Part shown: positions 7,224 through 54,800 of the stretch, piece by piece | Position numbering within the stretch: the stretch's first letter is position 1 | Layout: each line of letters starts with the position of its first letter | Assembly (NCBI RefSeq): GCF_033153115.1 | Contig: NW_026889752.1 | Location: 2,294,001-2,358,000 of the forward strand | Length of the DNA: 64,000 nt | Direction of reading: 5' to 3' | Source: Saccostrea echinata | Lineage: Eukaryota | Notes under the pieces: model-generated | What the model saw: the letters and a program-made list of their open reading frames with translations, nothing else | Database searches by the model: none | Told to the model about the DNA's origin: nothing | Position numbers and translations under genes: made by a program

Positions 7224-8139
7224 TTAATATAATCAATCAATAGTTAGTTAAACTTAAAACATCATCTTGTCATGAGGCTCATAAGGCCTGTGTTTATACC
7301 CATTTTCTGTAATGCTAAGCAGATGAGAATCATTAATTCCCATTGGATGGGACACCAGCCCATAGCAGGTTAACCCCCAGCATACAATGTAAGCCAGTGC
7401 CAATTACAGCTGGGTGGGGTGAGACATGACAGATGATACAAAAAATCTTTCTTTATAATCATGAAAATAACAACTTAAGCCATGTTAACATTTAAGTAAC
7501 ATGAAAGTTTAGCCACATGTTTTTTTTTTTAATCTTATATTTAAAATGTTCACATTAATGTTCATGATGTTGTTGGAAACATACTAGGCTAGTGATAAAA
7601 AAAGGTATGAAAAAGGTAAAAATTGGAACTCCAGAGTTTTATTTGTAGCATCTGTCCTTAAGCAAATTTTCCTAAATTATATATATTTTATCACTGTAAA
7701 ATATGGCTCCAGTCCATGTAGGTGATCAAAAATTGCCTAAGGGCATAAAAGGAACATACAAATATGTTGTGAACATCGCCGCTTCCCCTCCCTCGCCCCA
7801 AAGTTAATTTTACTTGAGAACAAGTATCGTTCATTCTTGAAACTTGTAGTGCGCCATAAAATCTTCAAAAATAGATATACACAATTACAAAATAACCTGT
7901 GTGTCCATTAAATCTTTTACTCTTTCCTCCTGTGTTTAAACTATAAAATGCCCGCGCTGTTGTTGCGTTTTAAACTTTATTTAGATAGGTTGTTCTGCGA
8001 ATATGTTAAATTTCACATCTAAAATATGATAAAAAAGAATTTACACGAAAGACAAAATAATATTAAGAGACAGTAAATTTTATGTTTCTGAACTTGAGTT
8101 GAAAGGATAATGGAAAAAATAAATAAAAAGCCCCCAAAA

Positions 8140-40841: not shown

Positions 40842-41502
40842 CAGAAACATCTTTTCCTTGAAATTAAAATCTACCCTGCAATTCAAACTTAGTAGATAAG
40901 TAGAAGTAATTTAATTCGGATTGATACCGTGATTTCTTGTAATTTGAAAATGTTTGGCTTTTGTTTATTTTTCTGTTGTGCTATTTATAATAATGCAGAC
41001 GATTGGCGTGCCTAGCTATTATAAAGCCAGGAGTCTTTAAAATATTAACACCTTTTACAAGCATTTATTTGTTATATTTTGATGACAAAGCAGTTAACGC
41101 TTAAAAAACACGAAACATTTTATGCAAAAACTGTTCTAACCCAGGTTATACATTTATAACTTGGGTAATTATAAGATCTAATTCTTATTATTTGATTTTC
41201 TATCATTCAGTATAAAGAATAAAACGATTACCCTTAAAATGTCTTCAAATTTTACAAACTTTATTTGTAATGTCAATTATTTAGCACAGCTTAATATATA
41301 TGAACAATTTCTCTATCCTATCAAATACACCAATAATTCTTACAGTATTGCTTACAATAGTAAATGTTCGCCTACCATATAGCATTTTTCTATTTTTAAT
41401 CTTTGTATTAAAAGTAATTAACATATCATTTTCAAGAAAGACCGGATAAAGAGAGCGATAAAAGAGTTTTATAAATTATCGGGTCTTTTTAAATTTCTAT
41501 TA

Positions 41503-41848
41503 ATTGATTGTATGTTGTTTTACGTCCCATTCGAGAATTTTTCACTCATAGAGAGACATCACCATATACCGATGAAGAGCTTCAAATTTTGACCTTTACT
41601 CGGCACTCAGGGCTATTGAGCAGTGAGGGGTCTTTATCGTGCCAACAACAGCCATGATACAGGGCCTCGGTTTTTAAGATGTCATCCGAAGGACCCGCAA
41701 CTTTCACTGCAAAGTGTCGAGCGCATGGCGAAGAAACAGTTGCTACCCATTTTTTATCGACTTAGGTCAGTCGCCGCCGAGATTCGAACTCGATCACGAC
41801 CTCCCGATCACGGAGCGAGCGCTCTGCCAACTGAGCTACCGTGAACGG
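41503..41848 (-). mobile_element. tRNA-derived SINE just upstream of the HEPN exon
   Basis: Same body as 44365-44697 and 60115-60468, with a tRNA-like head (GGTAGCTCAGTTGGCAGAGC...GTTCGAATC on the minus strand) and a (CAAT)n tail. Confidence 0.85.
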
Positions 41849-41908
41849 GTTTTTTTTTTTTATTTTTTATTTCTAAGATGAACATATTGCTTAATATTTC
41901 AGAACACA

Positions 41909-44900
41909 ATGTATGCATCAACAGAAGAAACAACTTATGCAAATCGAGCAGCTCGTTTGATATGTGGACCGTGCAAAGGTCAAATGAGGGATTTGCTAGA
42001 ACATTACGTACCAAGCAAATCTTTTCATTACGTACTTAAACACAATTATAAAAACCTACCAAAATTGACATTTTCTCAGCGAAATCTTATTTCCCCAAAA
42101 TCCGGTTCCTACAATGGAAATTATGAGGATTTTGACTTATCATTACTCTATGTCTTGTTGCGAAGCATATGTGGTCTAAGTGAACCAACCAACGGTTGGG
42201 ACGACAAACCAGATGACAGTGACAGGTCCATATCTGCAAACATAGCGAGAATAAGAGAAGCCAGAAACACGATTGCTCACTTACCGAACTACTCTATGAA
42301 TAGAAAAGATTTTCAAGCATTGTGGACAATGGTAAAAATGTCTATCATTGATATTGATACATATTTAAGTAACAGCAAATTTTATGAAAAGGAGGCTGAG
42401 TTTTTAGAAACAGAAACAATGGATCCGGAACGGGACAAGAAATACCAAGATGATTTACGTTTACTTGCAAAACAGGAAGAGGATTTGAAAACTCAGATAA
42501 GTAATAACTTACTTAAAACTTTATACATACAAAATGTTCAGATGTTAAATCGTTTCATTTAATTATTTGGATTAATGCATGATTTGGCATGCACCTTTGT
42601 TGCGTTTATTTTACGTATGAAAGGTAAAAATATTTCATTTTGGTAAAAAAAATTCTCCCTATCTAGAACACACGAATGAACGTATTGATAAGCAAGAAGA
42701 TGCTCTGCAGCTTTTTTCTAAGGATCTGGAACGTCTAAAGAAGATAGTGAAAAAACAAAACGAGGTTGCAGAAAGCCAAAAAACCAATATTTTGCCACAC
42801 AGTGAAGCATCTTATCTGCTTGAAGATTCCATAGAATGTACAAATCAAGCTCAACGCCTATTAGAAAAAGCAGAGGCAAAACTAGCAGACGCAGCTAGAT
42901 TAATAAAAGATGCCCAGCTAAGAGCACACATTGGTACATGTTAATTCTATTTTGGAAACACACTTCAACAGTAATGCTTTGCTATTTATCATTATTGGTC
43001 ATATCATGTACACCTCATGTAATATTTTTCTTCTTTTGTAGAAAAAGAGGTGTTTATGTTGACAGGTAAATATGAAAAGAAGTATTTCGAGGAAAATGAT
43101 TACTTACAATTAGTTATTGTTTATGTCCAAAATTTGGAGAATTCAGCTAACGAATTATTATTATAGAAAAATATTTTGTATAATAAGGGTGTAGTTTCCT
43201 TTTCTATTATGCAATGTGTTGAATATGAAAGATGCACCTAAGAGGGAACTTTTTCTCTATGTGAACAAGTAATTCATGAGAAGTACATGCATTGGTTGAC
43301 TTCCAGTAGTCCAAACTATATCTTTCTGGAGGAAAATGCACAATTATATTTAAATTGTAATTACGTCCATTATGGATTCATTTCATTATCAATACATTAA
43401 AGGTTCTTCATAACATCATTTACAAAGCATGCATGTCCTCAAAACATGACTTAATGATGGTACTAAGAATATTTCTTCAGAATGTAGTTTCAGGGGTTAG
43501 AATGGGTTTTCATATATAATCTCCCATGCAATGTTAAACATTAAAAAATCCTAGAAAAACAAATAAGAATATTTTTATCATAATGATAGTATAGCATTTA
43601 ATCAATTTGTAAGCAAATTTTTGAAGCATTATTTTATACATCACGGTCCATAAGGTAGGTTATTGCTTCAAAAGGAGTTCAATATTATTTTTTATGATGA
43701 CTAAATTTTACCGAATAATCCCACTACTTCCCACTGTCTAGTTTAAAGAAGCAAATTGTTGCCAAGCCAAACATGTTGTTAAAAATTATAATAAAAATGT
43801 AATATGGAAAAGATGTCAATTTCCCAACATTATCTTTTGTCGGGTCACCACTGTCACTTTAGTTAAACGACAAATTAGAATCACCATGCACGTCATGTCG
43901 TGACAAAATAGGCTGTTTTTTTTTCTTATACAGATATATATCTCATATCTAAAAATACTACCATCTGAATGCTGAAGGACAGTGCTTTATTATGTAAATA
44001 TAAGACTAGGAATATTAAGGTTGCATATAGACCCCCCCCTCCCACCCCCCACCCCCCACCCCCCAAAAAAAATGAAATTGAGGTTAAAAATTAAAATGCA
44101 CCTTTTAGGCTGCTTAAAATTGTTTTTGGACAATTATTAGGTCAAATGATAGTTGTTTTATAAGCTCATCCTAGCTGAAAGCACAAGTGAGTGTTTTTCT
44201 AATTACAATTTGTCCGACGTCCGTCTTTCCGTCTGTCTGTAAATTTTCCTCATTTTCAATTCTCAGGAACCACTGGTCAATCTCAACCAAATCTTCCCAC
44301 AAACCAATGTTGGGTAAATATGATTCAAGTTGGTCAACTGAAGGGTCACGCCTGCTTTTAAGGAATTGATTGATTGATGGTTGTTTTACGTCCCATTCGA
44401 GAATTTTTCACTCAGAGAGAGACGTCACCATATACAGGTGAAGTGCTTCAAATTTTGACCTCTACTTGGCACTCAGAGCCATTGAGCAGTGAGGGATCTT
44501 TATCGTGCCAACGTCTGCCGGTTTTTAAGGTGTCATCCGAAGGACCCGCAACTTTCACTTCAAAGTGCAGGGCGCATGGCGAAGGAACAGTTGCTACCCA
44601 TTTTTTATAGACTTAGGTCAGTCGCGGTCGAGATTCGAACTCACGACCTCCCGATCACGGAGCGAGCGCTCTACCGCCTCAGCTACCGTGAACGGTCGCT
44701 TTTAAGGAGATAATTCAGAGAAAATATGATGTCATCCTTTAAAAATCTTTTTCTGAAGAACCACTCGGTCAGGAACGATGAAACATCTGAAAGCTTCATT
44801 ACATTTGTAGATTCAAGTTTGCTAGGCGGGGCCACAATTGGGAATAAAACTTTTACATAGAAATATAGAGGGGAAAATAGATAAAAATGTTCTCCAGAGC

Positions 44901-47900
44901 AACAAAAGTCCTGATTGTACTAAGGTACAGTGTACTCAAATTTGTTCAAATCCTGACCCCCGGGGTCAGGGTGGGACCGCAATTTGAGATGACATGAATA
45001 TGTAGAAAAAATATTTAAAAATCCTCTTATGAAGAACAGCAAAGCAAAAATTAGTCATATTTACCAGGAAGCATCCTCAGGGAGTGTAAATAAATTTTTG
45101 TTAATAGCATGACCCTTGGGTGAAGGGATGGACCAGAATAGGCGATCAAAGTTTTACATAGGAATAAATATGAAGAAAACAAAAATTAAAAACCTTCTTG
45201 TCTAGAAGTAGAAAGCAATGAAAAGTTCTGAAAGCATCCTCAGATAGTGTAGATTCAAGTTTGTTCAAATCGTGGTCTATATGGGTAAATTGACGTCATT
45301 TTATATATGTACGACGTAATGACTCCGAAATTAACGTTTAGAATACCATGTGTTTCGTATAGTACCAACCAGATACAACCTAACACTAGAGCAAATTCTA
45401 AAAGTAAACCCTGGGTTTAATCTGCGTTCGCTCGGGATCCGCTATTTAAAAAAAATGTTGCAGTCTGGGTTCGCTGTACGTTCGGGTCAGGAGCGAACTA
45501 TTTTTGTGTTTTCTTTTTTATTTACGTAAACATTTTTTTTATCTCTTCTGAGTCAAAGGCTCAAAGAGCTAATGCTATAGCCATTTGTGCGGTGTGCATA
45601 AACTTTTAAGAATATGGGCCATAACTCAAGAACCCCTTCGCCATTTATTGTCAAATTTGTCACAGGGTATCCTTGGCCCAAGGGTTCCCGTTTATACTAA
45701 AACTAGGATTGCGACCCTTAAACAACGGGAGATAATTAGGAAAATAGAAACAAAAGTACTGGTTGCTAAAAAATCTTCTCAAGAACCACTCGGCAGATTA
45801 TCACCAAACTTACACAAAAGGATGAGGATATGTTGTAGATTAAAATTTGCACAGGGATTTACCCTGGGGAAAAGGGCGTGATCTCAAGGTCACTTCAAAG
45901 TTGACCAGAAATTACATATTATTAAAATGTTGATTTTTTGCTTACTATAAGGACTAGGATCATCAAATCTTGTCTGTTGATGCATCTAAGGACCTCATAT
46001 CATTTTGACTCAAAAGTAGGTCAAGGTGACATACTTTTTAAATTTTATGGCTTTATTTAAATATATCTGGTACTTATTCGCTTAGAACCATCAAACTTTG
46101 GCAGTTGATGCATCTTGGGTCCTCAAAGTATGTCATTTGAAAAGTATGTCACTGTGACCTACTTTTGAAATTTTATGGTTATAATTTTAAAAATATTTTA
46201 GGTATTAATTGGTTTAGAAACATCAAACTTAGTTGATGCATCTTGGGTCCTCAAAGAATGACAAGTGATAAGTAGGTCACCATAACCAACTCTCAGGTAC
46301 TAATTGGCTTAGAATCATCTTGGGTTCTCAGAGTGTTTCATCTAAAATGTAGGTCATGATGACCTACCTTTGGAATTTAAAGGGTTTATCTAAATATACA
46401 GGATACGTAGAGGCTTTAAATAGAAGTGATAGGTTGTACAGTTTATCAGAAGAGCGATTCAAGCCCCTTGGGCCTCTTGTTTTTAACTCCGTGGTCATCT
46501 TACATCTATATCTGTTCTATTTAGTTTTCATATCACTGTTATGTTAAACTGCATTGTTTAACAGGTACATTTACATTTATTTTTTTTCAATTAATGTTGA
46601 ATCTCAATAATTAAAAAAAACAATGAACAGTAGCCTAAATGACGAGAAAGAGAAATAGTTTGATTTTTTGTTCAGTACAGTTTATCTTAGTTACTTCAAT
46701 TTTTAACCGAATTGGAAGTGCATTTTTTATGTAATACGTAGATATTGATTTGCATATACCTTGCGTGTCATGTTTTGTTTCTAATAATTTCGCATACTCT
46801 CAAAAAGGGGGTAAAAATTCCCTGTCTCTACTCACTTACAATTAATTATTTTCATTTACTCATCATGATTTCAATATTTCAATTGCAAACAGACATATCC
46901 AGAAATGATGATTTTTGAAATGCCCGAAAAAAATATCAATTATAATAATTTTGTATATAAGCGGATTTTGTACATAATGATTGTTCATAAGCATGCCTCC
47001 AACCCCTTTCAAAAAGAACAAAAATGTTTAAGTAAATACAACAGCAAGAAATATAATTACTCCTTTATTAGCGGCATGAGGTCAAACAGAATTTCATTTT
47101 TAAATAATTTTGAATTAAGCAGTATCTATGAAAAGTATAAAAATAATGAATTTAAAATTAAATTTAAATTTAAGATGACTTAAGTAACAGAAATTTGGAT
47201 TTTTGACAAAAAATGTTGTAAATTAAGGGTAAGTGCAGACTATCTTCTAAAATATAAACTCTGGTGAGGCTTTGAAAGTGGTTTGACTACTTCTATAAAT
47301 TATGTAATTCACCTTTAATCAAAGTGCTGGTTTCATAATTTATTCTGTTCATGTTATTACGTCCTCAAAAATCTTTTTAGGGATGATGAAAATATACCAG
47401 TTTATCAAAGTATTCAGTGGAATTATACATAGTAATCCATATTTTATACCCCACCCCATCCCGCTCTCCAAGTCTTATCTATAAAAACATATTTTCTGTA
47501 CCTGTAATTTTTTTGTTCGTGGCGCCACTGTGTAGATATTTCTATCTGGACCCTTCAATTCAACGTTCTAAATCGGCGTTTCAAGTTTGTATATTCAAAC
47601 AAACCAGAAAACTTAAGGGGTTGGTGGGGTGGGGGAAGGGGGGAGTAATGGAAGGTTCAAATGTAAGGGGATTTATACTTAGGTACAACACTCTGACCAT
47701 GGTAAGGGATACACAACATGGAACCTTTGCACCCCAAAATAACTCCTCAACAGGTCTATGATTTTCAATACGTAATGGACTCTGGTTATCTTTCAAAAAG
47801 TAAATAAGTTTATGATATAAAGGCAATATAGAATTTTTTAAAAAAAATGTCAAAACGTAACAATTTCAATATACAAATGTCATTGAAAAAATATGGGTTC

Positions 47901-48934
47901 GCTCTGGGTTCAACCAGGGTGCACTTAAGGTGCCCTCTGGGTTCGCTTGGGGTCAGCTCTGGTCGGTACTGTACATTGGAAAATATTGAGAAAACTAGAA
48001 TAGGGCTATCATGGGCTTTTTCGAAAAGACTCTTCAAAGAAAAATTGGAAAGAGACAGAATTAGACGGGAAGAATGATACTGTCAATCAGCAATTCCATA
48101 TTCCACTTGGTTGGATAATAATCTTGGTTTATAAACGGTTATGTTAATGTACACATTCATAGAAGATTTTATTTATAGATGGACTATTGGTCTATTATAT
48201 AGCTCTCAACTTTAATAAAATAAAACTTACAGGGGCATAAGTGAAATGTATCATTGCTGTTTTCTTCAAATGTATCTTGGTTCATAGGTCTCTCACCGTA
48301 TATAAATGAAACGTACAGAACTTTTCTCACGACATGTTTTCTGTGCACTGTTTCATATCATTTCAGCTTTGGCGATCCTATTGCTTTTGACATCTGCATT
48401 TCATTGTCAAGAACAATGTTATTTTCCATGAGTTAAATTTTGCAAATTAACATAAAGAGTTACAGTTCAGCTAAAACTACAAGGTCGCAATTTTATATTT
48501 TATGAAAAAATACTGGACACCCTTTCCAAAAACTCTTCTGAGCTTAATCATTCTAATAAATTGGAAAAAAAAACACCTGACGAATTAAGGACAGCAAATT
48601 CTGAAAACATTCTCCTGTTATGACTTACTTGTCATTTTCGCATGGCAATGACTTTCTCACCACATATTTAGCGCAATTTTGATAATAATATGCCATGTTT
48701 GAGACACTCCTAAACTATAGGAGCTCCTGATTATAATTTCATATGATAGACTGTAGTTTATGTAAACTTTCTCCCGACTGTCATTTGTGTCTGTTCGCGT
48801 GCTTCCAAATTTTGAACAAAAGCTGGCTTTCAAAATTTAATTCATTAAAAGTTTGTATCTTGTTATATCATTTGTATGTCTTAAGACAAATCATACAGGG
48901 GTCTTGAAGTCATTTTTGGATTCTTACGCAAAAA

Positions 48935-48993
<59 letters not shown>

Positions 48994-51841
48994 ACAAATT
49001 AAAAAAAAGGAAAGTGGTGTCACGCTATCTGTTGTTTTGAAATAATCTTACATTGATATCAGGTTAATTTACATCCGTTACACGGTTTATATTTTATCAA
49101 ACAATTCCCAGAACTTTTGAAATACCCCTCATATTATGACGCTTGCTCAAATAATGCAATTGTGAAGAAGGCTTATTTTTTGGATACTTAATATTCACAA
49201 TACTATTTGGAGAACGCAAAATCTTTTGAGGGTACATTGATAGAGTATGTAACAAATGACATAAAAAAGCATACTTTCTTCTTTAAAATAGTTTATAAAG
49301 CTACTCGTTGATTCAATCAATATGTCATTTTGTCCATAAGTTAAATAGAATAACATGCGTCATTAAATAAAACAAAAGTGAAGCATGATTGTTTATTCCT
49401 TTGCAGATAGAACCAGACATATTTTGAGAAGGCATTGCGAGTCACAGTCATATGCAGAACTTTGTTTTGTTCAGCAAACCATTCAACAGCTTGAAGAAAA
49501 AAAGATTTCCATTATCTCTGGAGAAATTGGTTCTGGTAAAACATGCACTGCATATCAGGTGATGTGCAAGTTAGAAAAATTAAAACGTGAATTATTTCGT
49601 ATTCCTGTCATTGTTTCTTCTCCTCAAGAATGGGAAGCTGTTATTGTTACCAAATGTCGGTACGTTATTTTGCTGGATGATATTTTTGGCAGAGTTTGCA
49701 TTAGTAAAAATTCTTATTACGAATGGAATGCCTTTCTGGACAAAATGTACTCGGATGTTGAAACAACTAACCAACACGTCATTCTCTGTATGCGGACAAA
49801 CATACTTAATCAAGCTTTGGATATTTTTTCGAAGAAAAAAATGTTTAGATGTGCAGGGCATATTAAGCATGACATTTCAATTGAAGAAAAACGAAAAATT
49901 ATAAGACAATTCTCTATTTCCTGTCTAGATGAATCAAATCACATACATGGTACCAAAAAGCTTATCGAATCTGAGATAGAGGAGATTATTGACACACAAC
50001 TGTTTGACAATTATGGATTTCCATTACTTTGCTTTTTCTTTTTTGCAAATAAAACATTTTATTCCAGTAAAGCTGATTTCTTTAGAAATGCAAAGAATGC
50101 TCTTCGTATATTAATAGACAGGATGATGAATTCCGACAACATTCAAGAGAAACTGGCTTATTGTGTTCTTGTATATGTGTTGTTTAAAAAACAAATCAAT
50201 CTTCAAAGCATACCAGAGAAAGAACTAGTCTGTATTTTGAACCTGATAGGAATATCATCAGAACACATTGTGGAAAATGATATGAGGAATGCCTTGATGA
50301 TCTTTCTGCATGGAACATTTCTTTCATCAACCACTGAAGGAGACATATTCGAACTTTCACATGATGTAATAGGGGACGTTGTACTCGTTTCATTTGGAAA
50401 GTTGCGACCAGATATACTTATCAAATACTGCAGTCGAGAAACATTTCTAGAGTATATTGGACCCTTCGAATCATGCGAAAATGAAAGCGTTTTAACAATT
50501 ACAAAAACTCACTACCAGTATTTGGTGAACAGAATGTTTCGTCGTGATGATTGTGACTGTGATGAAGGTGAACTTCTAAATGGGGCTCTGGATATTCTGT
50601 GGCATCCTGCTTGTGAAAATGAAAAATTTGTTGCGTATTTACTAGACCATGGAGTCTCGGAGCATATGCCAGCAATATTAAGGAAGGTCTGGAAATGTCT
50701 TGAAGATGGAAAGCACGAAAATGCAATGTTATTCCGAAATTTACTACAAAGATTTGGTCCAATACAAGACAGTAGGGTATGGACAAATTCATTATCTGGA
50801 ATAACAACATCTCTGAAAAAAATCTTGGGTTTTGCGAATCCTAAACCCTCTATCAGTATTACGAAAGAAAACATTTCCTTGGCATTGAAAGGCTCCATTA
50901 TTCGTGGACATGAGAAAAACACTCTGAGTATTTTGACATATATTAAAAAAGATACAAAACTCCACGATCTTCTTCATCTGAAAGTAGATGGAGTAAACAT
51001 ATTCCACCTGTGTATTGCATATGGTTGGGAAACTGTTGTAAATTTGATGTTCGAGATAAACCCTGAATTAGAAGGAAAAAGTACTTTAGATGGATACACA
51101 GCCGTTCATTTTGCTGCATATGGGGGTCGTACTGAACTTCTGAGAATGTTAGAAGAAAAGAATGCAAGCTTTATCAGAAAATCAAAGAACGAATACTCTG
51201 CTTTTCATTGCCTTTTGTTTGGATTAAGATACGGACAGCATATTGTGAGAGGACCAGCTTTTACCAAAAAAATTAAGCTGGATGTTAACCTCAAATTTCC
51301 AGGGGAGAAAAGCTACATGGAAGCATTAGACATCTTGGCGGAGAAAGGTTTGGACATATCAAAGGATGTACAGTTTGAGGTTGATCGGTATGGTCACAAT
51401 ATCATACACTACCTAATAATTCACAATTACAAGGAACTACTAGTGAAATGTCTCGGAGACAAAAAGTTAGATTTTTTCTTTTTTAAATCAAGCAATCTTT
51501 TATCCAATCCCCTAAACGTTGCTGTCTATTTGGGGCGAGCTGAAATAGCTGAAAAGCTATGGGAGGCTGGAGGAAGAGTAGATAGATCTCAAGAGATAAG
51601 TCCATTCGATCTCATATCTGAAGGAAGAAAGTTTCAGGATAAAACTGGAAGTAGAACTGGTGAATGGTATGATGAATTTGCAACATACGATACCCCAGAA
51701 CAATTCGATAAAGATGAAGTTCTACAGACCCGTAGCATGCTTTCAATAATTGAGAATGTCCTGGTGACATATGGGAATAAAGACGATTTTGATACCATAC
51801 AAATGTTCTTGGAGAGCCATGTATACAAAAAACCCATCTAA
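41909..51841 (+). CDS. HEPN (DZIP3-type) - coiled coil - STAND NTPase (nSTAND3-like) - ankyrin repeat protein, ~1105 aa: join(41909..42500,42667..42933,43042..43065,49407..51841)
   Basis: All three GT-AG introns are phase 1 and the join is stop-free (3318 nt). HEPN hallmarks are FDLSLLYVLLRSICG, PTNGW and REARNTIAH. The NTPase has Walker A GEIGSGKT (49520-49543) and Walker B ILLDDIFG, then GFPL and a winged-helix-like H-D motif (FELSHDVIGD). Ankyrin repeats include DGYTAVHFAAYGGRTELLRMLEEKNA and NPLNVAVYLGRAEIAEKLWEAGG. Extra small exons in the 6.3-kb intron cannot be excluded. Confidence 0.82.
44157..45280 (+). mobile_element. HINE-type element with Cg170-like repeats, interrupted by a SINE
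   Basis: 5' end AGCTCATCCTAGCTGAAAGCACAAGTGAG, a GTCC/GTCT tract and repeated GTAGATTCAAGTTTG / ATCCTGACCCCCGGGG units, as in 15488-16417. Confidence 0.7.
44365..44697 (-). mobile_element. tRNA-derived SINE with 11-bp TSD
   Basis: TSD GCTTTTAAGGA at 44354-44364 and 44698-44708. The tRNA head and (CAAT)n tail are on the minus strand. Confidence 0.88.
45540..46482 (+). mobile_element. HINE-type element with ~135-bp internal repeats
   Basis: 5' TCTTCTGAGTCAAAGGCTCAAAGAG, repeated CATCAAACTT...GTTGATGCATCTTGGGTCCTCAAAG units, and 3' CAGAAGAGCGATTCAAGCCCCTTGGGCCTCTTGTT. Confidence 0.65.
48932..48993. repeat. (AAAT)n microsatellite
   Basis: About 15 consecutive AAAT units. Confidence 0.95.
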
Positions 51842-54800
51842 CCAATTCAATCCAAAATAATAATAATAATAAGAAGAAGAAGAAGAAGAAGAAGAAAGAC
51901 AGACAGACAAACAGATATACCAAAAAATTCCAATATTTTGAATTCTTTTGCTTGGTCTAAAATAATAGGTTAATAAGTGTTAAAAGGACTTAGACGTATG
52001 AACCTGAACTGTCCATGATATTTAAGACCACAGAAAACAGCAACAAAAATGATTGAGATAAAAAGTGTTTTCATAGTGACATGACATAATTTGTGCAATT
52101 AATCTAAATGAGACAATGCTGAAATATTATAGGATAGATTTCAGTAACTTAAATAGATCTTGATTCCCACGTATAGTACCTCATGGTAGAACTTTTAATG
52201 AATTTAAACATAAGCCATCAACTGATTGCTGACAGGGCGTTTTATATCTAATACCAAACCCTGCACGACTTTTTGCGCCCCTATGTGTTTGTGCCTTTGA
52301 GCCTAATTTTTCTCTAGACCTACATGTAGCTGTTTAGATATTCCACGTTTGTTTTCTTAGATTTAAATATGATCCATAGAAAAAAACTTTTGCACATTAG
52401 AGGTTCTTGTATAAGCCTTAAGGTCAATATTATCATTTTGAAATTTTAAATGAAACAAATATTTGTAGAATTTTTGAAAATAATATCTTGATAGTGAATC
52501 AAAACTTATAACATAAAAAAGGTTGAAGTAATTTTGTCTACTTTTCAGCTAACAATTTTGGATATCCAAAAAGTAGATGAGCAAATTGATCATACTTTTT
52601 CCATTTCATTCTTAAAGATGGTGAAACAAGTACATGTATCTTACTTCTAATTACGTGGACTACTAATAGAAAGTGTATATATAGTCACAGAAAAGTCTTC
52701 AAATTTTAGTTCCGGGTGACATTATGAGTTTTAACAGGTGCATATACAAATTTTTGTACTTAATTCTTTACTTTTTGCTTTACAACAATTAAGTACATTT
52801 TATGCCTTTTTGTATTAGGAACATTGCCGTTGGATAAACGAATTGCTTGAGTTACAATAGATAATAAATTTCTGATAAATTTCTTTTTCCTGTTTTTCTT
52901 TTCTAGTTTATTCTCCTTATTATTAAAAGTTTTTTGCAAAGTTCAATATGAGATTTCCTGTTCAGAATGCACAGTAGTATGCATAATACATGTATCTTTA
53001 TACAGTTTCGGAGTACGAAAATAATAGCTTTTACTGAGGAACATTGGTAACCCGGACCCACAAATTGGACCCTTTCATCTTTCGGTCTAAATTTCTGGGT
53101 AATGCAATTTTATATTTACTGTAAACATACATTTTACGCTGGTTCAAAATTCCTCGAAATCACAATTTCTGTTAAATCCGCCGGTAAAAAATTACGCGGA
53201 ACTCTTATATTGCCCTTGTATGTCTAACTAGACATTAAGTACGCTGTGATAAATTTCCATGGAATATTTGCTGTCATGTACGTAGGGTAAAAATTCCATT
53301 CCAAAAAGTACTGCTACAATTATCTTCAAATAATAAAAAATACGACTGACGATTCACTGATCGTGACAATATGTTGGGAAACACAAGCGTCCAGATAAAT
53401 AAGGCTCGACTGTATAGATTTAGCCTGTTTTCACATTCCATGATGTTTGTAACCTCATAAAGCAGAGGGTTAATTTGAGAGCTCAATTCTCTGGCAATTG
53501 TGGAAAACCTAACAATGAAATTCTTTCTCTCTTTCTGTGTTACTGTGTAACACTGTCAGTCTTCTGGAGACGTTTTCTATTGATTCTTTTTATGCCAGCT
53601 TAACTTAAATATAACATCAAAGTAATTACAACACAAATAAAATTTATTTGATTTTACAGACTGGTTTTGAACTAATACTGTGCTTAAAATCATTATACAT
53701 CTGTCTTAAACGTGGGATTTAAAATTGTGGTTTTAGAACCAAATAAGTTTTGCACTAGCAGATCTCAACACCTCGTTTATACGTGACGTTATCCTATCCA
53801 AAATCTGACAATATTCCCCTAGTTATTAAAGCAAATTGAGAGTTACTTGATTAGTCTGTTGAAAAAGTAAATGATTTAATCAAACGATCTCAATACTGCT
53901 TTTGGTGGGAATATGACAGTTATGCAGTGTTGTAGTGAAAATATGTAAATGCTGGAAGGCAATTATATATTCAAACATAATTACTTTGTTAAGTTAAAAA
54001 CATCAAACATTATAAACTAGAACATCAGTTTAATTCCAGCTGTGTGCAATTTATATTTTTATATATTCATATTTTATTTACATTTTTATTATTTTCTTAA
54101 ATTCTTCACCATGTTCATACTTTACCAAATATTTTTGAATCGCGATAAATCTGCACACACACTGGAGTCGAAGTGACAATGGTGGTGTGTTTACTTTCTC
54201 ACATTTCTTGACTGCAGTTAATTTTAATATCTATCATAAAAACACCATAGATTTCCAATTTTCTCAACTACTATTGGACTTTTGCGAGAAGCGCTGACTT
54301 TTACTATCAACGACTTACTTTTACACTAGGTTAGTGTATGGAAGCTCTTTTGCAATATGAATATTAAGCTTAGCAGTTCATTAAACGATGATAATGGACT
54401 ATTTCAAAGAACATATTACAATGTCTAGGAAGGGAAGGAAAAACAAAAAATGCCACAATTCGTCTTGAATTTACACAAAATGGGGATCTCTACATATTTA
54501 GATCCCCATTTTTTATAGAGTTAAAAAAATGGAGCTTACAAATTAAGTATAGGTAATATATTTAAATAGAAAAATGTAAAAATAGAAATAAAAAGTTAGA
54601 AATAATCTTAAAAAGGTCTTAAGAATAGTACAGCAAAGTCTAAGCACCCATGCGCTGAAGAATATATTTTGAATCGGAGAGTTAGTGTGAGACAAAATGG
54701 GATCAAAGTTTTCATTAGATTTCATTCATGAAATAAATCTATGAAAATGGTCTTTAAAATAACTATAATTCGTCAAAATAATAAGCATTGAAGATTATCT

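What the first reader, a model, noticed from the sequence alone, without database searches (positions are those of the whole stretch)
41909..51841. HEPN RNase - coiled coil - STAND NTPase - ankyrin gene: an animal effector/switch/sensor receptor resembling NLRs and prokaryotic Avs defence proteins
Seen: the 217-aa and 818-aa ORFs, 7 kb apart, splice together through a coiled-coil exon and a 24-nt micro-exon, with all introns in phase 1, into one ~1105-aa frame. The HEPN catalytic motif RNTIAH (RxxxxH, 42263-42280), Walker A GEIGSGKT and Walker B LLDD are intact. From knowledge: HEPN nucleases act as dimers, and STAND NTPases oligomerise when their C-terminal repeat sensor binds ligand. Inference: ankyrin sensing could trigger oligomerisation and switch on an RNase, an innate antiviral or cell-death module functionally analogous to RNase L and bacterial Avs. 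Such domain combinations are annotated in bivalve proteomes but, to my knowledge, are not functionally characterised.
Basis: partly seen in the sequence, partly recalled or inferred. Interest (0 to 1): 0.8.

Follow-up and report, generated by a model that had tools for sequence, protein, structure and literature searches.

The report
Oyster HEPN–STAND–ankyrin receptor-like gene
This is one intact, transcribed oyster gene that joins a predicted RNA-cutting HEPN head to a STAND NTPase switch and ankyrin repeats. It belongs to a large bivalve family that has already been described, and the proposed immune role of that family has never been tested at the bench.

Summary
The window is Saccostrea echinata. 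The four exons (41909-42500, 42667-42933, 43042-43065, 49407-51841) are all GT-AG and all phase 1. They encode exactly the 1105-aa RefSeq protein LOC133178514. Spliced RNA contigs from four runs (three samples, two studies) carry the end of exon 2, the 24-nt micro-exon and exon 4 in one piece. Pfam gives HEPN_DZIP3 (1e-29), nSTAND3 (7e-23) and ankyrin. R119/N120/H124, Walker A, Walker B and the sensor-1 arginine are intact and near-invariant in relatives.

DZIP3-type HEPN fused to STAND NTPases and ankyrins, expanded in oysters, was described in 2013 and called NLR-like in 2021-2022. This genome alone holds at least 150 HEPN_DZIP3 exons. The scan has met the family three times before on other DNA of this genome.

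By sequence it is not a NACHT-LRR NLR, an Avs or an RNase L relative. Ligand-triggered RNase activity remains inference.

This copy has three distinctive features. It is single-copy, with its nearest relative only 31-32% identical. It carries a heptad-rich long-helix linker encoded by in-frame cassette exons. It is expressed.

The parts
41909..42500 (+). Exon 1: start codon, HEPN_DZIP3 domain (residues 42-179, 42032-42445) and the start of the first long helix. It ends in phase 1 with donor GTAATA.
42263..42280 (+). HEPN Rx4H motif RNTIAH (R119, N120, H124).
   Evidence: Conserved 70/72, 71/72 and 68/73 in relatives.
42667..42933 (+). Exon 2, 267 nt, phase 1-1. It encodes residues 198-286, the middle of two long helices (model H173-238 and H246-306).
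   Evidence: Heptad periodicity. Its last 9 nt are seen in the RNA contigs.
43042..43065 (+). Exon 3, a 24-nt micro-exon, phase 1-1 (residues 287-294).
   Evidence: Present in RNA contigs of 4 runs.
43066..49406 (+). Intron 3, 6341 nt. It contains a SINE-like copy (44365-44720) and 128-nt tandem repeats (45955-46411).
49407..51841 (+). Exon 4: STAND NTPase module, helical domains, ankyrin repeats and the stop codon.
49469..49906 (+). nSTAND3 P-loop core (residues 316-461), with Walker A at 49520-49543, Walker B at 49667-49681 and the sensor-1 arginine at 49793-49795.
   Evidence: Fold matches.
50864..51823 (+). C-terminal ankyrin-type repeat region (residues 781-1100; the Pfam Ank_2 match is residues 806-883).
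51842..52800 (+). 3' UTR, covered by RNA contigs at least to 52800. An (AAG)n repeat lies at 51847-51921.

Best explanation
Shown: this is a single four-exon gene of the oyster Saccostrea echinata, intact and transcribed. It encodes a 1105-aa protein with no detected signal peptide. The order of parts is: a DZIP3-type HEPN domain with an intact RNxxxH motif; two long helices of about 60 residues each; a STAND NTPase of the nSTAND3 clade (NBD, helical domain, winged helix) with intact Walker A, Walker B and sensor-1 arginine; and about seven to eight degenerate ankyrin repeats. It is a divergent, single-copy member of a very large bivalve family with this same architecture.

Inferred: it works as an intracellular conflict or immune receptor of the STAND type. 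The ankyrin repeats hold the protein inactive until they bind a ligand, which may be a viral protein or an altered host protein. Nucleotide exchange in the NTPase then drives oligomerisation. That brings HEPN domains together so that two Rx4H motifs form a composite RNase site. The active RNase cuts viral or host RNA and shuts down translation in the infected cell. The helical stalk sets the distance between the HEPN heads and the NTPase ring.
For: Gene model: it equals RefSeq P0001. Spliced contigs of four runs from two studies confirm the two downstream junctions, and no retrocopy exists in the assembly.
Domains and motifs: Pfam scores are far above the cut-offs. The catalytic and NTP-binding residues are intact here and conserved in 88-99% of up to 90 aligned relatives.
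Structure: the AlphaFold model has mean pLDDT 86.7 and pTM 0.70, with helices H173-238 and H246-306. The first of these has heptad periodicity that 0 of 2000 shuffles reach. The longest structural alignments of the NTPase module, 274-347 residues through the winged helix, are to STAND proteins: MalT, NRC1/NRC2, the STAND-TPR protein 6mfv and NLRP9. Avs5, SAMD9, Apaf-1 and NLRP3 are among the Foldseek hits.
Family: 39 of 46 relatives have HEPN_DZIP3, 39 have nSTAND3 and 34 have Ank. Nine of the 21 scored nSTAND3 exons in this genome have a HEPN exon within 15 kb upstream on the same strand.
Conservation pattern: the HEPN exon is 46-51% identical to paralogues, the STAND-ankyrin exon only about 31%. 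That pattern fits a fixed effector with a diversifying sensor.
Precedent: human SAMD9 is a STAND-like protein whose intrinsic N-terminal tRNase is switched on by poxvirus infection (PMC10246899). The RNase-effector idea for HEPN-NACHT proteins is stated in PMC3710099 section 16.
Against: No RNase activity, oligomerisation, ligand or induction has been shown for this protein or any family member in the literature searched. The founding member of the HEPN family, human DZIP3/hRUL138, is known as an RNA-binding ubiquitin ligase and not as a nuclease (my own knowledge). Transcript polymorphism gives pN/pS of about 0.43 over exon 4 and about 1 over 51329-51597 (small numbers), so constraint on the sensor end is weak. 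By Z-score the NTPase fold is as close to Clp/Hsp104 AAA+ domains as to STAND proteins over the first roughly 210 residues. The HEPN domain was not folded and searched on its own.
Confidence: 0.6

Rival explanations
1. The polarity is reversed or the head is non-catalytic. Here the HEPN domain binds RNA as a sensor or tether, as in human DZIP3. The NTPase-ankyrin part then recruits other proteins, so no RNA is cut.
For: PMC8662601 proposes that HEPN-NLRs may be cytoplasmic RNA sensors. DZIP3/hRUL138 was described as an RNA-binding protein (my own knowledge). Ankyrin repeats are generic protein-protein modules.
Against: R119, N120 and H124 are kept in 93-99% of relatives, and in 194 of 202 pearl-oyster HEPN proteins (PMC9646362). 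That is the pattern of a maintained active site. In characterised STAND proteins the N-terminal domain is the effector and the C-terminal repeats are the sensor (PMC10246899).
Confidence: 0.2
2. The biochemistry is the same, but the target is not a virus. The family would police transposon RNA, mediate self/non-self recognition, or act against transmissible cancer cells.
For: PMC9646362 suggests degradation of viral and transposon RNA. PMC8195603 raises infectious tumour cells as triggers for bivalve expansions. The gene is expressed in all three samples examined, with no challenge on record.
Against: No evidence favours any one trigger. The expression data are contigs only, without sample conditions.
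Confidence: 0.12
3. This is a functionless drifting copy of an expanded family: transcribed, but no longer under selection.
For: Many paralogues carry in-frame stops. pN/pS is about 0.43 overall and about 1 near the C-terminus. No orthologue above about 35% identity appears in other oysters.
Against: The 3318-nt frame is open. There are no stops or frameshifts in the exon-4 part that the contigs of four runs cover (table 8). Every catalytic and NTP-binding motif is intact. All splice sites are canonical.
Confidence: 0.06
4. These are two separate genes (a HEPN gene and an NTPase-ankyrin gene) that were wrongly merged.
For: The two large ORFs lie 6.8 kb apart. Short HEPN-only proteins exist in the family.
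Against: RNA contigs of four runs join exon 2, the micro-exon and exon 4. The contigs carry 914 and 968 nt upstream of the joint, which matches exons 1-3. The RefSeq model is identical. The same join is seen in paralogue P0033.
Confidence: 0.02

Closest known systems
Bivalve/invertebrate 'HEPN-NLR' proteins: DZIP3/hRUL138-like HEPN fused to a STAND NTPase and repeats (Anantharaman 2013, PMC3710099; Tassia 2021, PMC8662601; Takeuchi 2022, PMC9646362)
   Same: Same HEPN family (PF18738). Same N-terminal position and the same Rx4H motif with N after R. Same tripartite layout, same host group and the same lineage-specific expansion. Ankyrin is listed among the fusion partners as early as 2013.
   Different: Those papers counted NACHT (PF05729). 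This protein and 39 of 46 relatives match nSTAND3 instead, and only 2 match NACHT. This copy has an extra helical stalk encoded by cassette exons. It is only 31-32% identical to its nearest relative.
Human SAMD9/SAMD9L
   Same: An animal cytosolic STAND-like NTPase with an intrinsic N-terminal RNase effector. It is autoinhibited by its C-terminal half and activated by virus infection (PMC10246899). It is the top full-length Foldseek hit (9zjs_B, E 5e-6, 869 columns) and is also hit by the NTPase module alone.
   Different: The effector is an AlbA2-type tRNase, not a HEPN. The sensor is not ankyrin. TM-scores are low (0.25-0.42) and there is no sequence similarity. This is an analogue, not a family member.
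Bacterial Avs (antiviral STAND) proteins
   Same: An effector nuclease, a STAND NTPase and a C-terminal repeat sensor in one polypeptide. Avs5 and Avs4 structures appear among the fold hits (9jap_A Z 13.6 over 188 residues; 8dgf_B E 1e-4).
   Different: No PADLOC Avs model matches. The only defence-library hit is the candidate PDC-S73, on the P-loop core (2.4e-11). The host is eukaryotic, the gene has introns, and the sensor is ankyrin rather than TPR-like.
RNase L
   Same: Ankyrin repeats plus a HEPN-superfamily RNase that is activated by dimerisation or oligomerisation in antiviral defence. 6m12 appears at rank 46 of the full-length fold search, probably through its ankyrin repeats.
   Different: In RNase L the ankyrins are N-terminal and bind 2-5A. 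The switch is a pseudokinase, not a STAND NTPase. The RNase is the KEN type, not the DZIP3 type. No kinase or Ribonuc_2-5A hit was found here.
Canonical NLRs and plant CNLs (NACHT or NB-ARC plus LRR)
   Same: The NBD-HD-WHD module aligns over 274-347 residues with NRC1/NRC2 and NLRP9. The effector-switch-sensor logic is the same.
   Different: There is no NACHT hit, and NB-ARC reaches only E 0.14. There are no LRRs. The effector is an enzyme rather than a death-fold adaptor.

Membership tests
HEPN superfamily, DZIP3/hRUL138-like family (PF18738) | Profile match above Pfam's gathering score | tested here: met
   103.4 bits against a cut-off of 27, E 1.2e-29, profile positions 7-144 of 144
HEPN superfamily, DZIP3/hRUL138-like family (PF18738) | Rx4-6H motif, usually with N after R | tested here: met
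   R119-N-T-I-A-H124 at 42263-42280. The columns are conserved 70/72, 71/72 and 68/73.
HEPN superfamily, DZIP3/hRUL138-like family (PF18738) | All-alpha HEPN fold | tested here: inconclusive
   The model is all-helical over residues 6-168, with block-mean pLDDT 74-98.
HEPN superfamily, DZIP3/hRUL138-like family (PF18738) | Metal-independent RNase activity of a dimer | not testable with these tools
   Needs a bench assay
STAND NTPases, nSTAND3 clade (PF20720) | Profile match above the gathering score | tested here: met
   81.6 bits against 27.2, E 6.6e-23. 39 of 46 relatives also match.
STAND NTPases, nSTAND3 clade (PF20720) | Walker A, Walker B (hhhhDD) and sensor-1 arginine | tested here: met
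   GEIGSGKT, ILLDD and R424 are intact and near-invariant in relatives
STAND NTPases, nSTAND3 clade (PF20720) | NBD, helical domain and winged-helix module followed by repeats | tested here: met
   The module model has pLDDT 89.6 and pTM 0.88. Alignments running through the winged helix are found only with STAND proteins: MalT 311-317 residues, 6mfv 302, NRC2 276, NLRP9 347. Ankyrin repeats lie C-terminal.
STAND NTPases, nSTAND3 clade (PF20720) | Ligand-driven oligomerisation | not testable with these tools
   Needs biochemistry or cryo-EM
NLR in the strict sense (NACHT + LRR) | NACHT domain | tested here: not met
   No NACHT hit at E <= 1. Only 2 of 46 relatives match NACHT.
NLR in the strict sense (NACHT + LRR) | C-terminal leucine-rich repeats | tested here: not met
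   Ankyrin repeats instead
Bacterial Avs1-5 | Match to an Avs family model | tested here: not met
   PADLOC gives only PDC-S73 (2.4e-11), PDC-M72A and BrxA at weak scores, and no Avs model
Bacterial Avs1-5 | Nuclease effector, STAND and repeat sensor in one protein | tested here: met
RNase L | KEN-type RNase plus pseudokinase plus N-terminal 2-5A-binding ankyrins | tested here: not met
   No kinase or Ribonuc_2-5A match. The HEPN is of the DZIP3 type and N-terminal, and the ankyrins are C-terminal.
SAMD9/SAMD9L | SAM, AlbA2 tRNase, SIR2-like, P-loop, TPR and OB architecture | tested here: not met
   Only a fold-level likeness of the STAND part. No sequence match to solved SAMD9 chains.

The most novel reading that the evidence does not exclude
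The protein is a true ligand-activated RNase, which would make it the first animal HEPN-STAND receptor to work like bacterial Avs or human SAMD9. Its helical stalk, built from in-frame phase-1 cassette exons, would be a length-adjustable spacer that sets how HEPN heads pair in the oligomer. Stalk length, by exon gain or loss or by alternative splicing, would then tune activation across the family.
Probability: 0.35. Interest if true: 0.7.

Novelty: new member of a known kind. Interest (0 to 1): 0.35.

Why it matters
If the mechanism holds, bivalves, which lack adaptive immunity and interferon-type RNase L, would carry hundreds of single-polypeptide sensors that cut RNA directly. That is the logic shown so far for bacterial Avs proteins and for human SAMD9. 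This copy is a convenient test case: it is intact, expressed and single-copy, has all catalytic residues, and at 1105 aa is small enough to express. The idea itself is published, and any intact family member would serve equally well. The value of this finding is therefore a confirmed gene model and a candidate for experiments, not a discovery.

Tried and rejected
- Word-index protein searches, with the 818-aa ORF and with residues 1-780 of P0001, returned no related protein beyond the gene's own product; one search also listed one weak ankyrin-only hit. The candidate lists were capped at 8000. The full HMMER search was then used.
Exon structures of the S. cucullata, C. virginica and O. edulis relatives could therefore not be read. 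One S. echinata paralogue was used instead.
The exon-4 side was laid and the join was read from the loose ends. The exon 1/exon 2 junction and the 5' end were therefore not seen in reads.
- Sequence search of the PDB found only ankyrin proteins.
- VIA Z-scores do not separate STAND from Clp/Hsp104 AAA+ domains over the first roughly 210 residues. Only alignment length does.
- The six-frame search with nSTAND3 is unspecific: it rings in all 14 control prokaryotes. No phyletic claim is based on it.
- NCBIfam gave nothing useful.
- The separate-genes reading and the retrocopy reading were rejected.
The exon pieces were searched by reference, and the identical database protein P0001 was used by its id. 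In one search a script tested which GT/AG pair reproduces the database protein P0033.
Full report
**What is there**

The 217-aa ORF (41909-42562) and the 818-aa ORF (49385-51841) exist as described. I read the borders from the sequence and checked them against a tblastn of the database protein. The coding exons are 41909-42500, 42667-42933, 43042-43065 and 49407-51841.
- Every intron begins with GT and ends with AG.
- Every junction falls after the first base of a codon (phase 1).
- The sum is 3318 nt, which is 1105 codons plus the stop.

A protein search with the large ORF returned P0001, 'uncharacterized protein LOC133178514 [Saccostrea echinata]', 1105 aa and 100% identical. Its sequence reads straight through the four exons. 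The window is therefore oyster DNA, G000:C3:2294001-2358000.

**Transcript evidence**

Runs holding exon 4 were found. Their contigs were laid on 48300-52800.
- In all four runs (X1, X2, X3, X5; three samples, two studies) the contigs cover exon 4 without gaps and stop matching at 49404.
- The overhang reads CACACATTG, then AAAAAGAGGTGTTTATGTTGA. These are the last nine bases of exon 2 and the micro-exon. The micro-exon's final CAG is shared with the intron end, which is why the match breaks at 49404 rather than 49407.
- This shows junctions 42933/43042 and 43065/49407 directly.
- One X3 contig carries 968 nt and one X5 contig carries 914 nt upstream of the joint. The expected coding sequence there is 880 nt. 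The X5 contig continues through the 3' UTR beyond 52800.
- The assembly has no second high-identity copy, so a retrocopy does not explain the spliced form.
- The exon 1/exon 2 join was not seen in reads.

**Domains and motifs**

I searched exon by exon, by reference.
- HEPN_DZIP3: 103 bits, E 1.2e-29, covering nearly the whole profile.
- nSTAND3: 82 bits, E 6.6e-23.
- Ank_2: 44 bits.
- NACHT does not match. NB-ARC reaches only E 0.14.

Motif positions are RNTIAH at 42263-42280, GEIGSGKT at 49520-49543, ILLDD at 49667-49681 and the sensor-1 arginine at 49793-49795. In an alignment of up to 90 relatives the conservation is as follows.

| Residue | Conserved in |
|---|---|
| R119 | 70/72 |
| N120 | 71/72 |
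| H124 | 68/73 |
| Walker A lysine (K339) | 73/74 |
| D385 | 69/77 |
| D386 | 67/78 |
| R424 | 71/77 |

All of these residues are intact here.

**Structure**

The full-length AlphaFold model has mean pLDDT 86.7 and pTM 0.70. It shows:
- a helical HEPN head (residues 6-168);
- two very long helices, 173-238 and 246-306, separated by a seven-residue turn;
- a P-loop alpha/beta domain, followed by helical and winged-helix parts;
- about seven to eight ankyrin-like helix pairs with two disordered loops.

The first long helix has strong heptad periodicity: 0 of 2000 shuffles reach it. The second is weaker, with 10% of shuffles reaching it.

The NTPase module was folded alone (pLDDT 89.6, pTM 0.88).
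- Foldseek finds plant CNL resistosomes, NLRP2/3, NOD2, Apaf-1/Dark, MalT, Avs5, Avs4 and human SAMD9.
- By Z-score the first roughly 210 residues are equally close to Clp/Hsp104 AAA+ domains.
- The long alignments that run through the winged helix are only to STAND proteins: MalT 311-317 residues, 6mfv 302, NRC2 276, NLRP9 347.
- No STAND subclass stands out.

Sequence search of the PDB finds only ankyrin proteins.

**The family**

This genome has at least 150 HEPN_DZIP3 matches over the cut-off, from 276 candidates. Most lie on open frames of 210-240 aa, like exon 1. It also has 278 nSTAND3 candidates. Nine of the 21 scored nSTAND3 exons have a HEPN exon 1.6-14 kb upstream on the same strand.

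The exhaustive HMMER search found 2242 relatives at E <= 0.001 and 63 at E <= 1e-30. The best is only 32% identical. The named ones are all bivalves: Saccostrea cucullata, Crassostrea virginica, Ostrea edulis, Pecten, Ylistrum, Mercenaria, Sinanodonta, Potamilus and Tegillarca. One gastropod appears for the STAND part.

Of 46 relatives scanned, 39 have HEPN_DZIP3, 39 have nSTAND3, 34 have Ank_2 and 2 have NACHT.

In the oyster's own genome the nearest paralogue is 46-51% identical in the HEPN exon but about 31% in the STAND-ankyrin exon. Exon 2 has no paralogue at E <= 1e-30. Several paralogues carry stops.

**Exon logic**

In the S. echinata paralogue P0033 the HEPN exon is joined directly to the STAND exon, again in phase 1. 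So in the gene studied here the 267-nt and 24-nt exons are in-frame 1-1 cassettes that lengthen the stalk. Across 57 relatives the distance from the HEPN histidine to Walker A ranges from 35 to 444 residues and bunches near 110-160 and 195-210. The closest S. cucullata relatives, P0004 and P0013, share the long form.

**Variation**

Among the differences between the RNA contigs and the reference that were listed for exon 4, 14 are synonymous, 23 are non-synonymous and none is a stop. This gives pN/pS of about 0.43. In 51329-51597, within the last ankyrins, 11 of 14 are non-synonymous. The numbers are small and the list was truncated by the tool.

**Comparison with what is known**

- Anantharaman et al. 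2013 (PMC3710099, Table 1 and section 16) list the DZIP3/hRUL138 HEPN family with fusions to ankyrin, NACHT, CARD, Death and LRR, and with expansions in Nematostella, the oyster and Capsaspora. For a sister HEPN family (CXorf38) fused to NACHT and Death domains, they propose RNase L-like degradation of cellular or viral RNA, and they note the likeness to bacterial HEPN-STAND proteins.
- Tassia et al. 2021 (PMC8662601) report HEPN-NLRs in nine invertebrate taxa.
- Takeuchi et al. 2022 (PMC9646362) report more than 50 HEPN-NACHT proteins in the pearl oyster, an intact Rx4-6H in 194 of 202 HEPN proteins, and an NLR-like sensing hypothesis.
- I found no functional study.
- Human SAMD9 is a tested animal precedent for a STAND-like protein with an intrinsic RNase effector (PMC10246899).
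- PADLOC gives no Avs match, only the candidate PDC-S73 on the P-loop core.

The protein is therefore a member of the published bivalve HEPN-STAND-repeat kind. More exactly, it belongs to the nSTAND3-ankyrin branch. It is an analogue of NLRs, Avs, RNase L and SAMD9, not a member of any of them.

Earlier notes of this scan describe three other loci of the same family in this genome and reach the same view.

**Verdict**

The class is 'new member of a known kind', with modest interest.

Noticed in passing
window 41499-41850 and 44365-44720: These are two copies (89-93% identical) of a SINE-like element. Its end reads as a tRNA-Thr-like gene on the minus strand (41769-41846). One copy ends about 60 nt upstream of the gene's ATG and is followed by a T-run. 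The other copy lies in intron 3.
   Followed up: partly
window 41897-41908: An acceptor-like tttcag lies 6 nt before the ATG. The RNA contigs carry about 34-88 nt more than the coding sequence upstream of the joint. The 5' UTR may therefore be a separate upstream exon, or it may start inside the SINE. This is unresolved.
   Followed up: no
window 45955-46411: Three to four tandem copies of a unit of about 128 nt (61-84% alike) lie in intron 3.
   Followed up: no
window 51847-51921: An (AAT)n/(AAG)n microsatellite starts a few bases after the stop codon, in the 3' UTR. Contigs of all runs are interrupted there.
   Followed up: no
window 51329-51597: There is a cluster of differences between the RNA contigs and the reference in the last ankyrin repeats: 11 non-synonymous against 3 synonymous. 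X2 and X3 each have two alternative contigs here. This may be allelic diversity of the sensor end.
   Followed up: partly
window 48419-48772: Contigs of X3 and X5 match short pieces of intron 3 and show a joint 48442>48740 with 318 other letters in between. This is probably a repeated element transcribed elsewhere, or an intron polymorphism.
   Followed up: no
G000:C1:53311278-53312867, G000:C33:30778128-30779897, G000:C33:35154814-35156463: These paralogous STAND exons carry 2-4 in-frame stops, so decayed copies sit beside intact ones in the same clusters.
   Followed up: no
G000:C33:36306514-36318898 and G000:C33:37022394-37034849: These two HEPN + nSTAND3 loci have identical scores and open-frame lengths (1831 aa) and lie 716 kb apart. 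They are either a recent segmental duplication or an assembly duplicate. The pairs C5/C36 and C17/C63 look the same.
   Followed up: no
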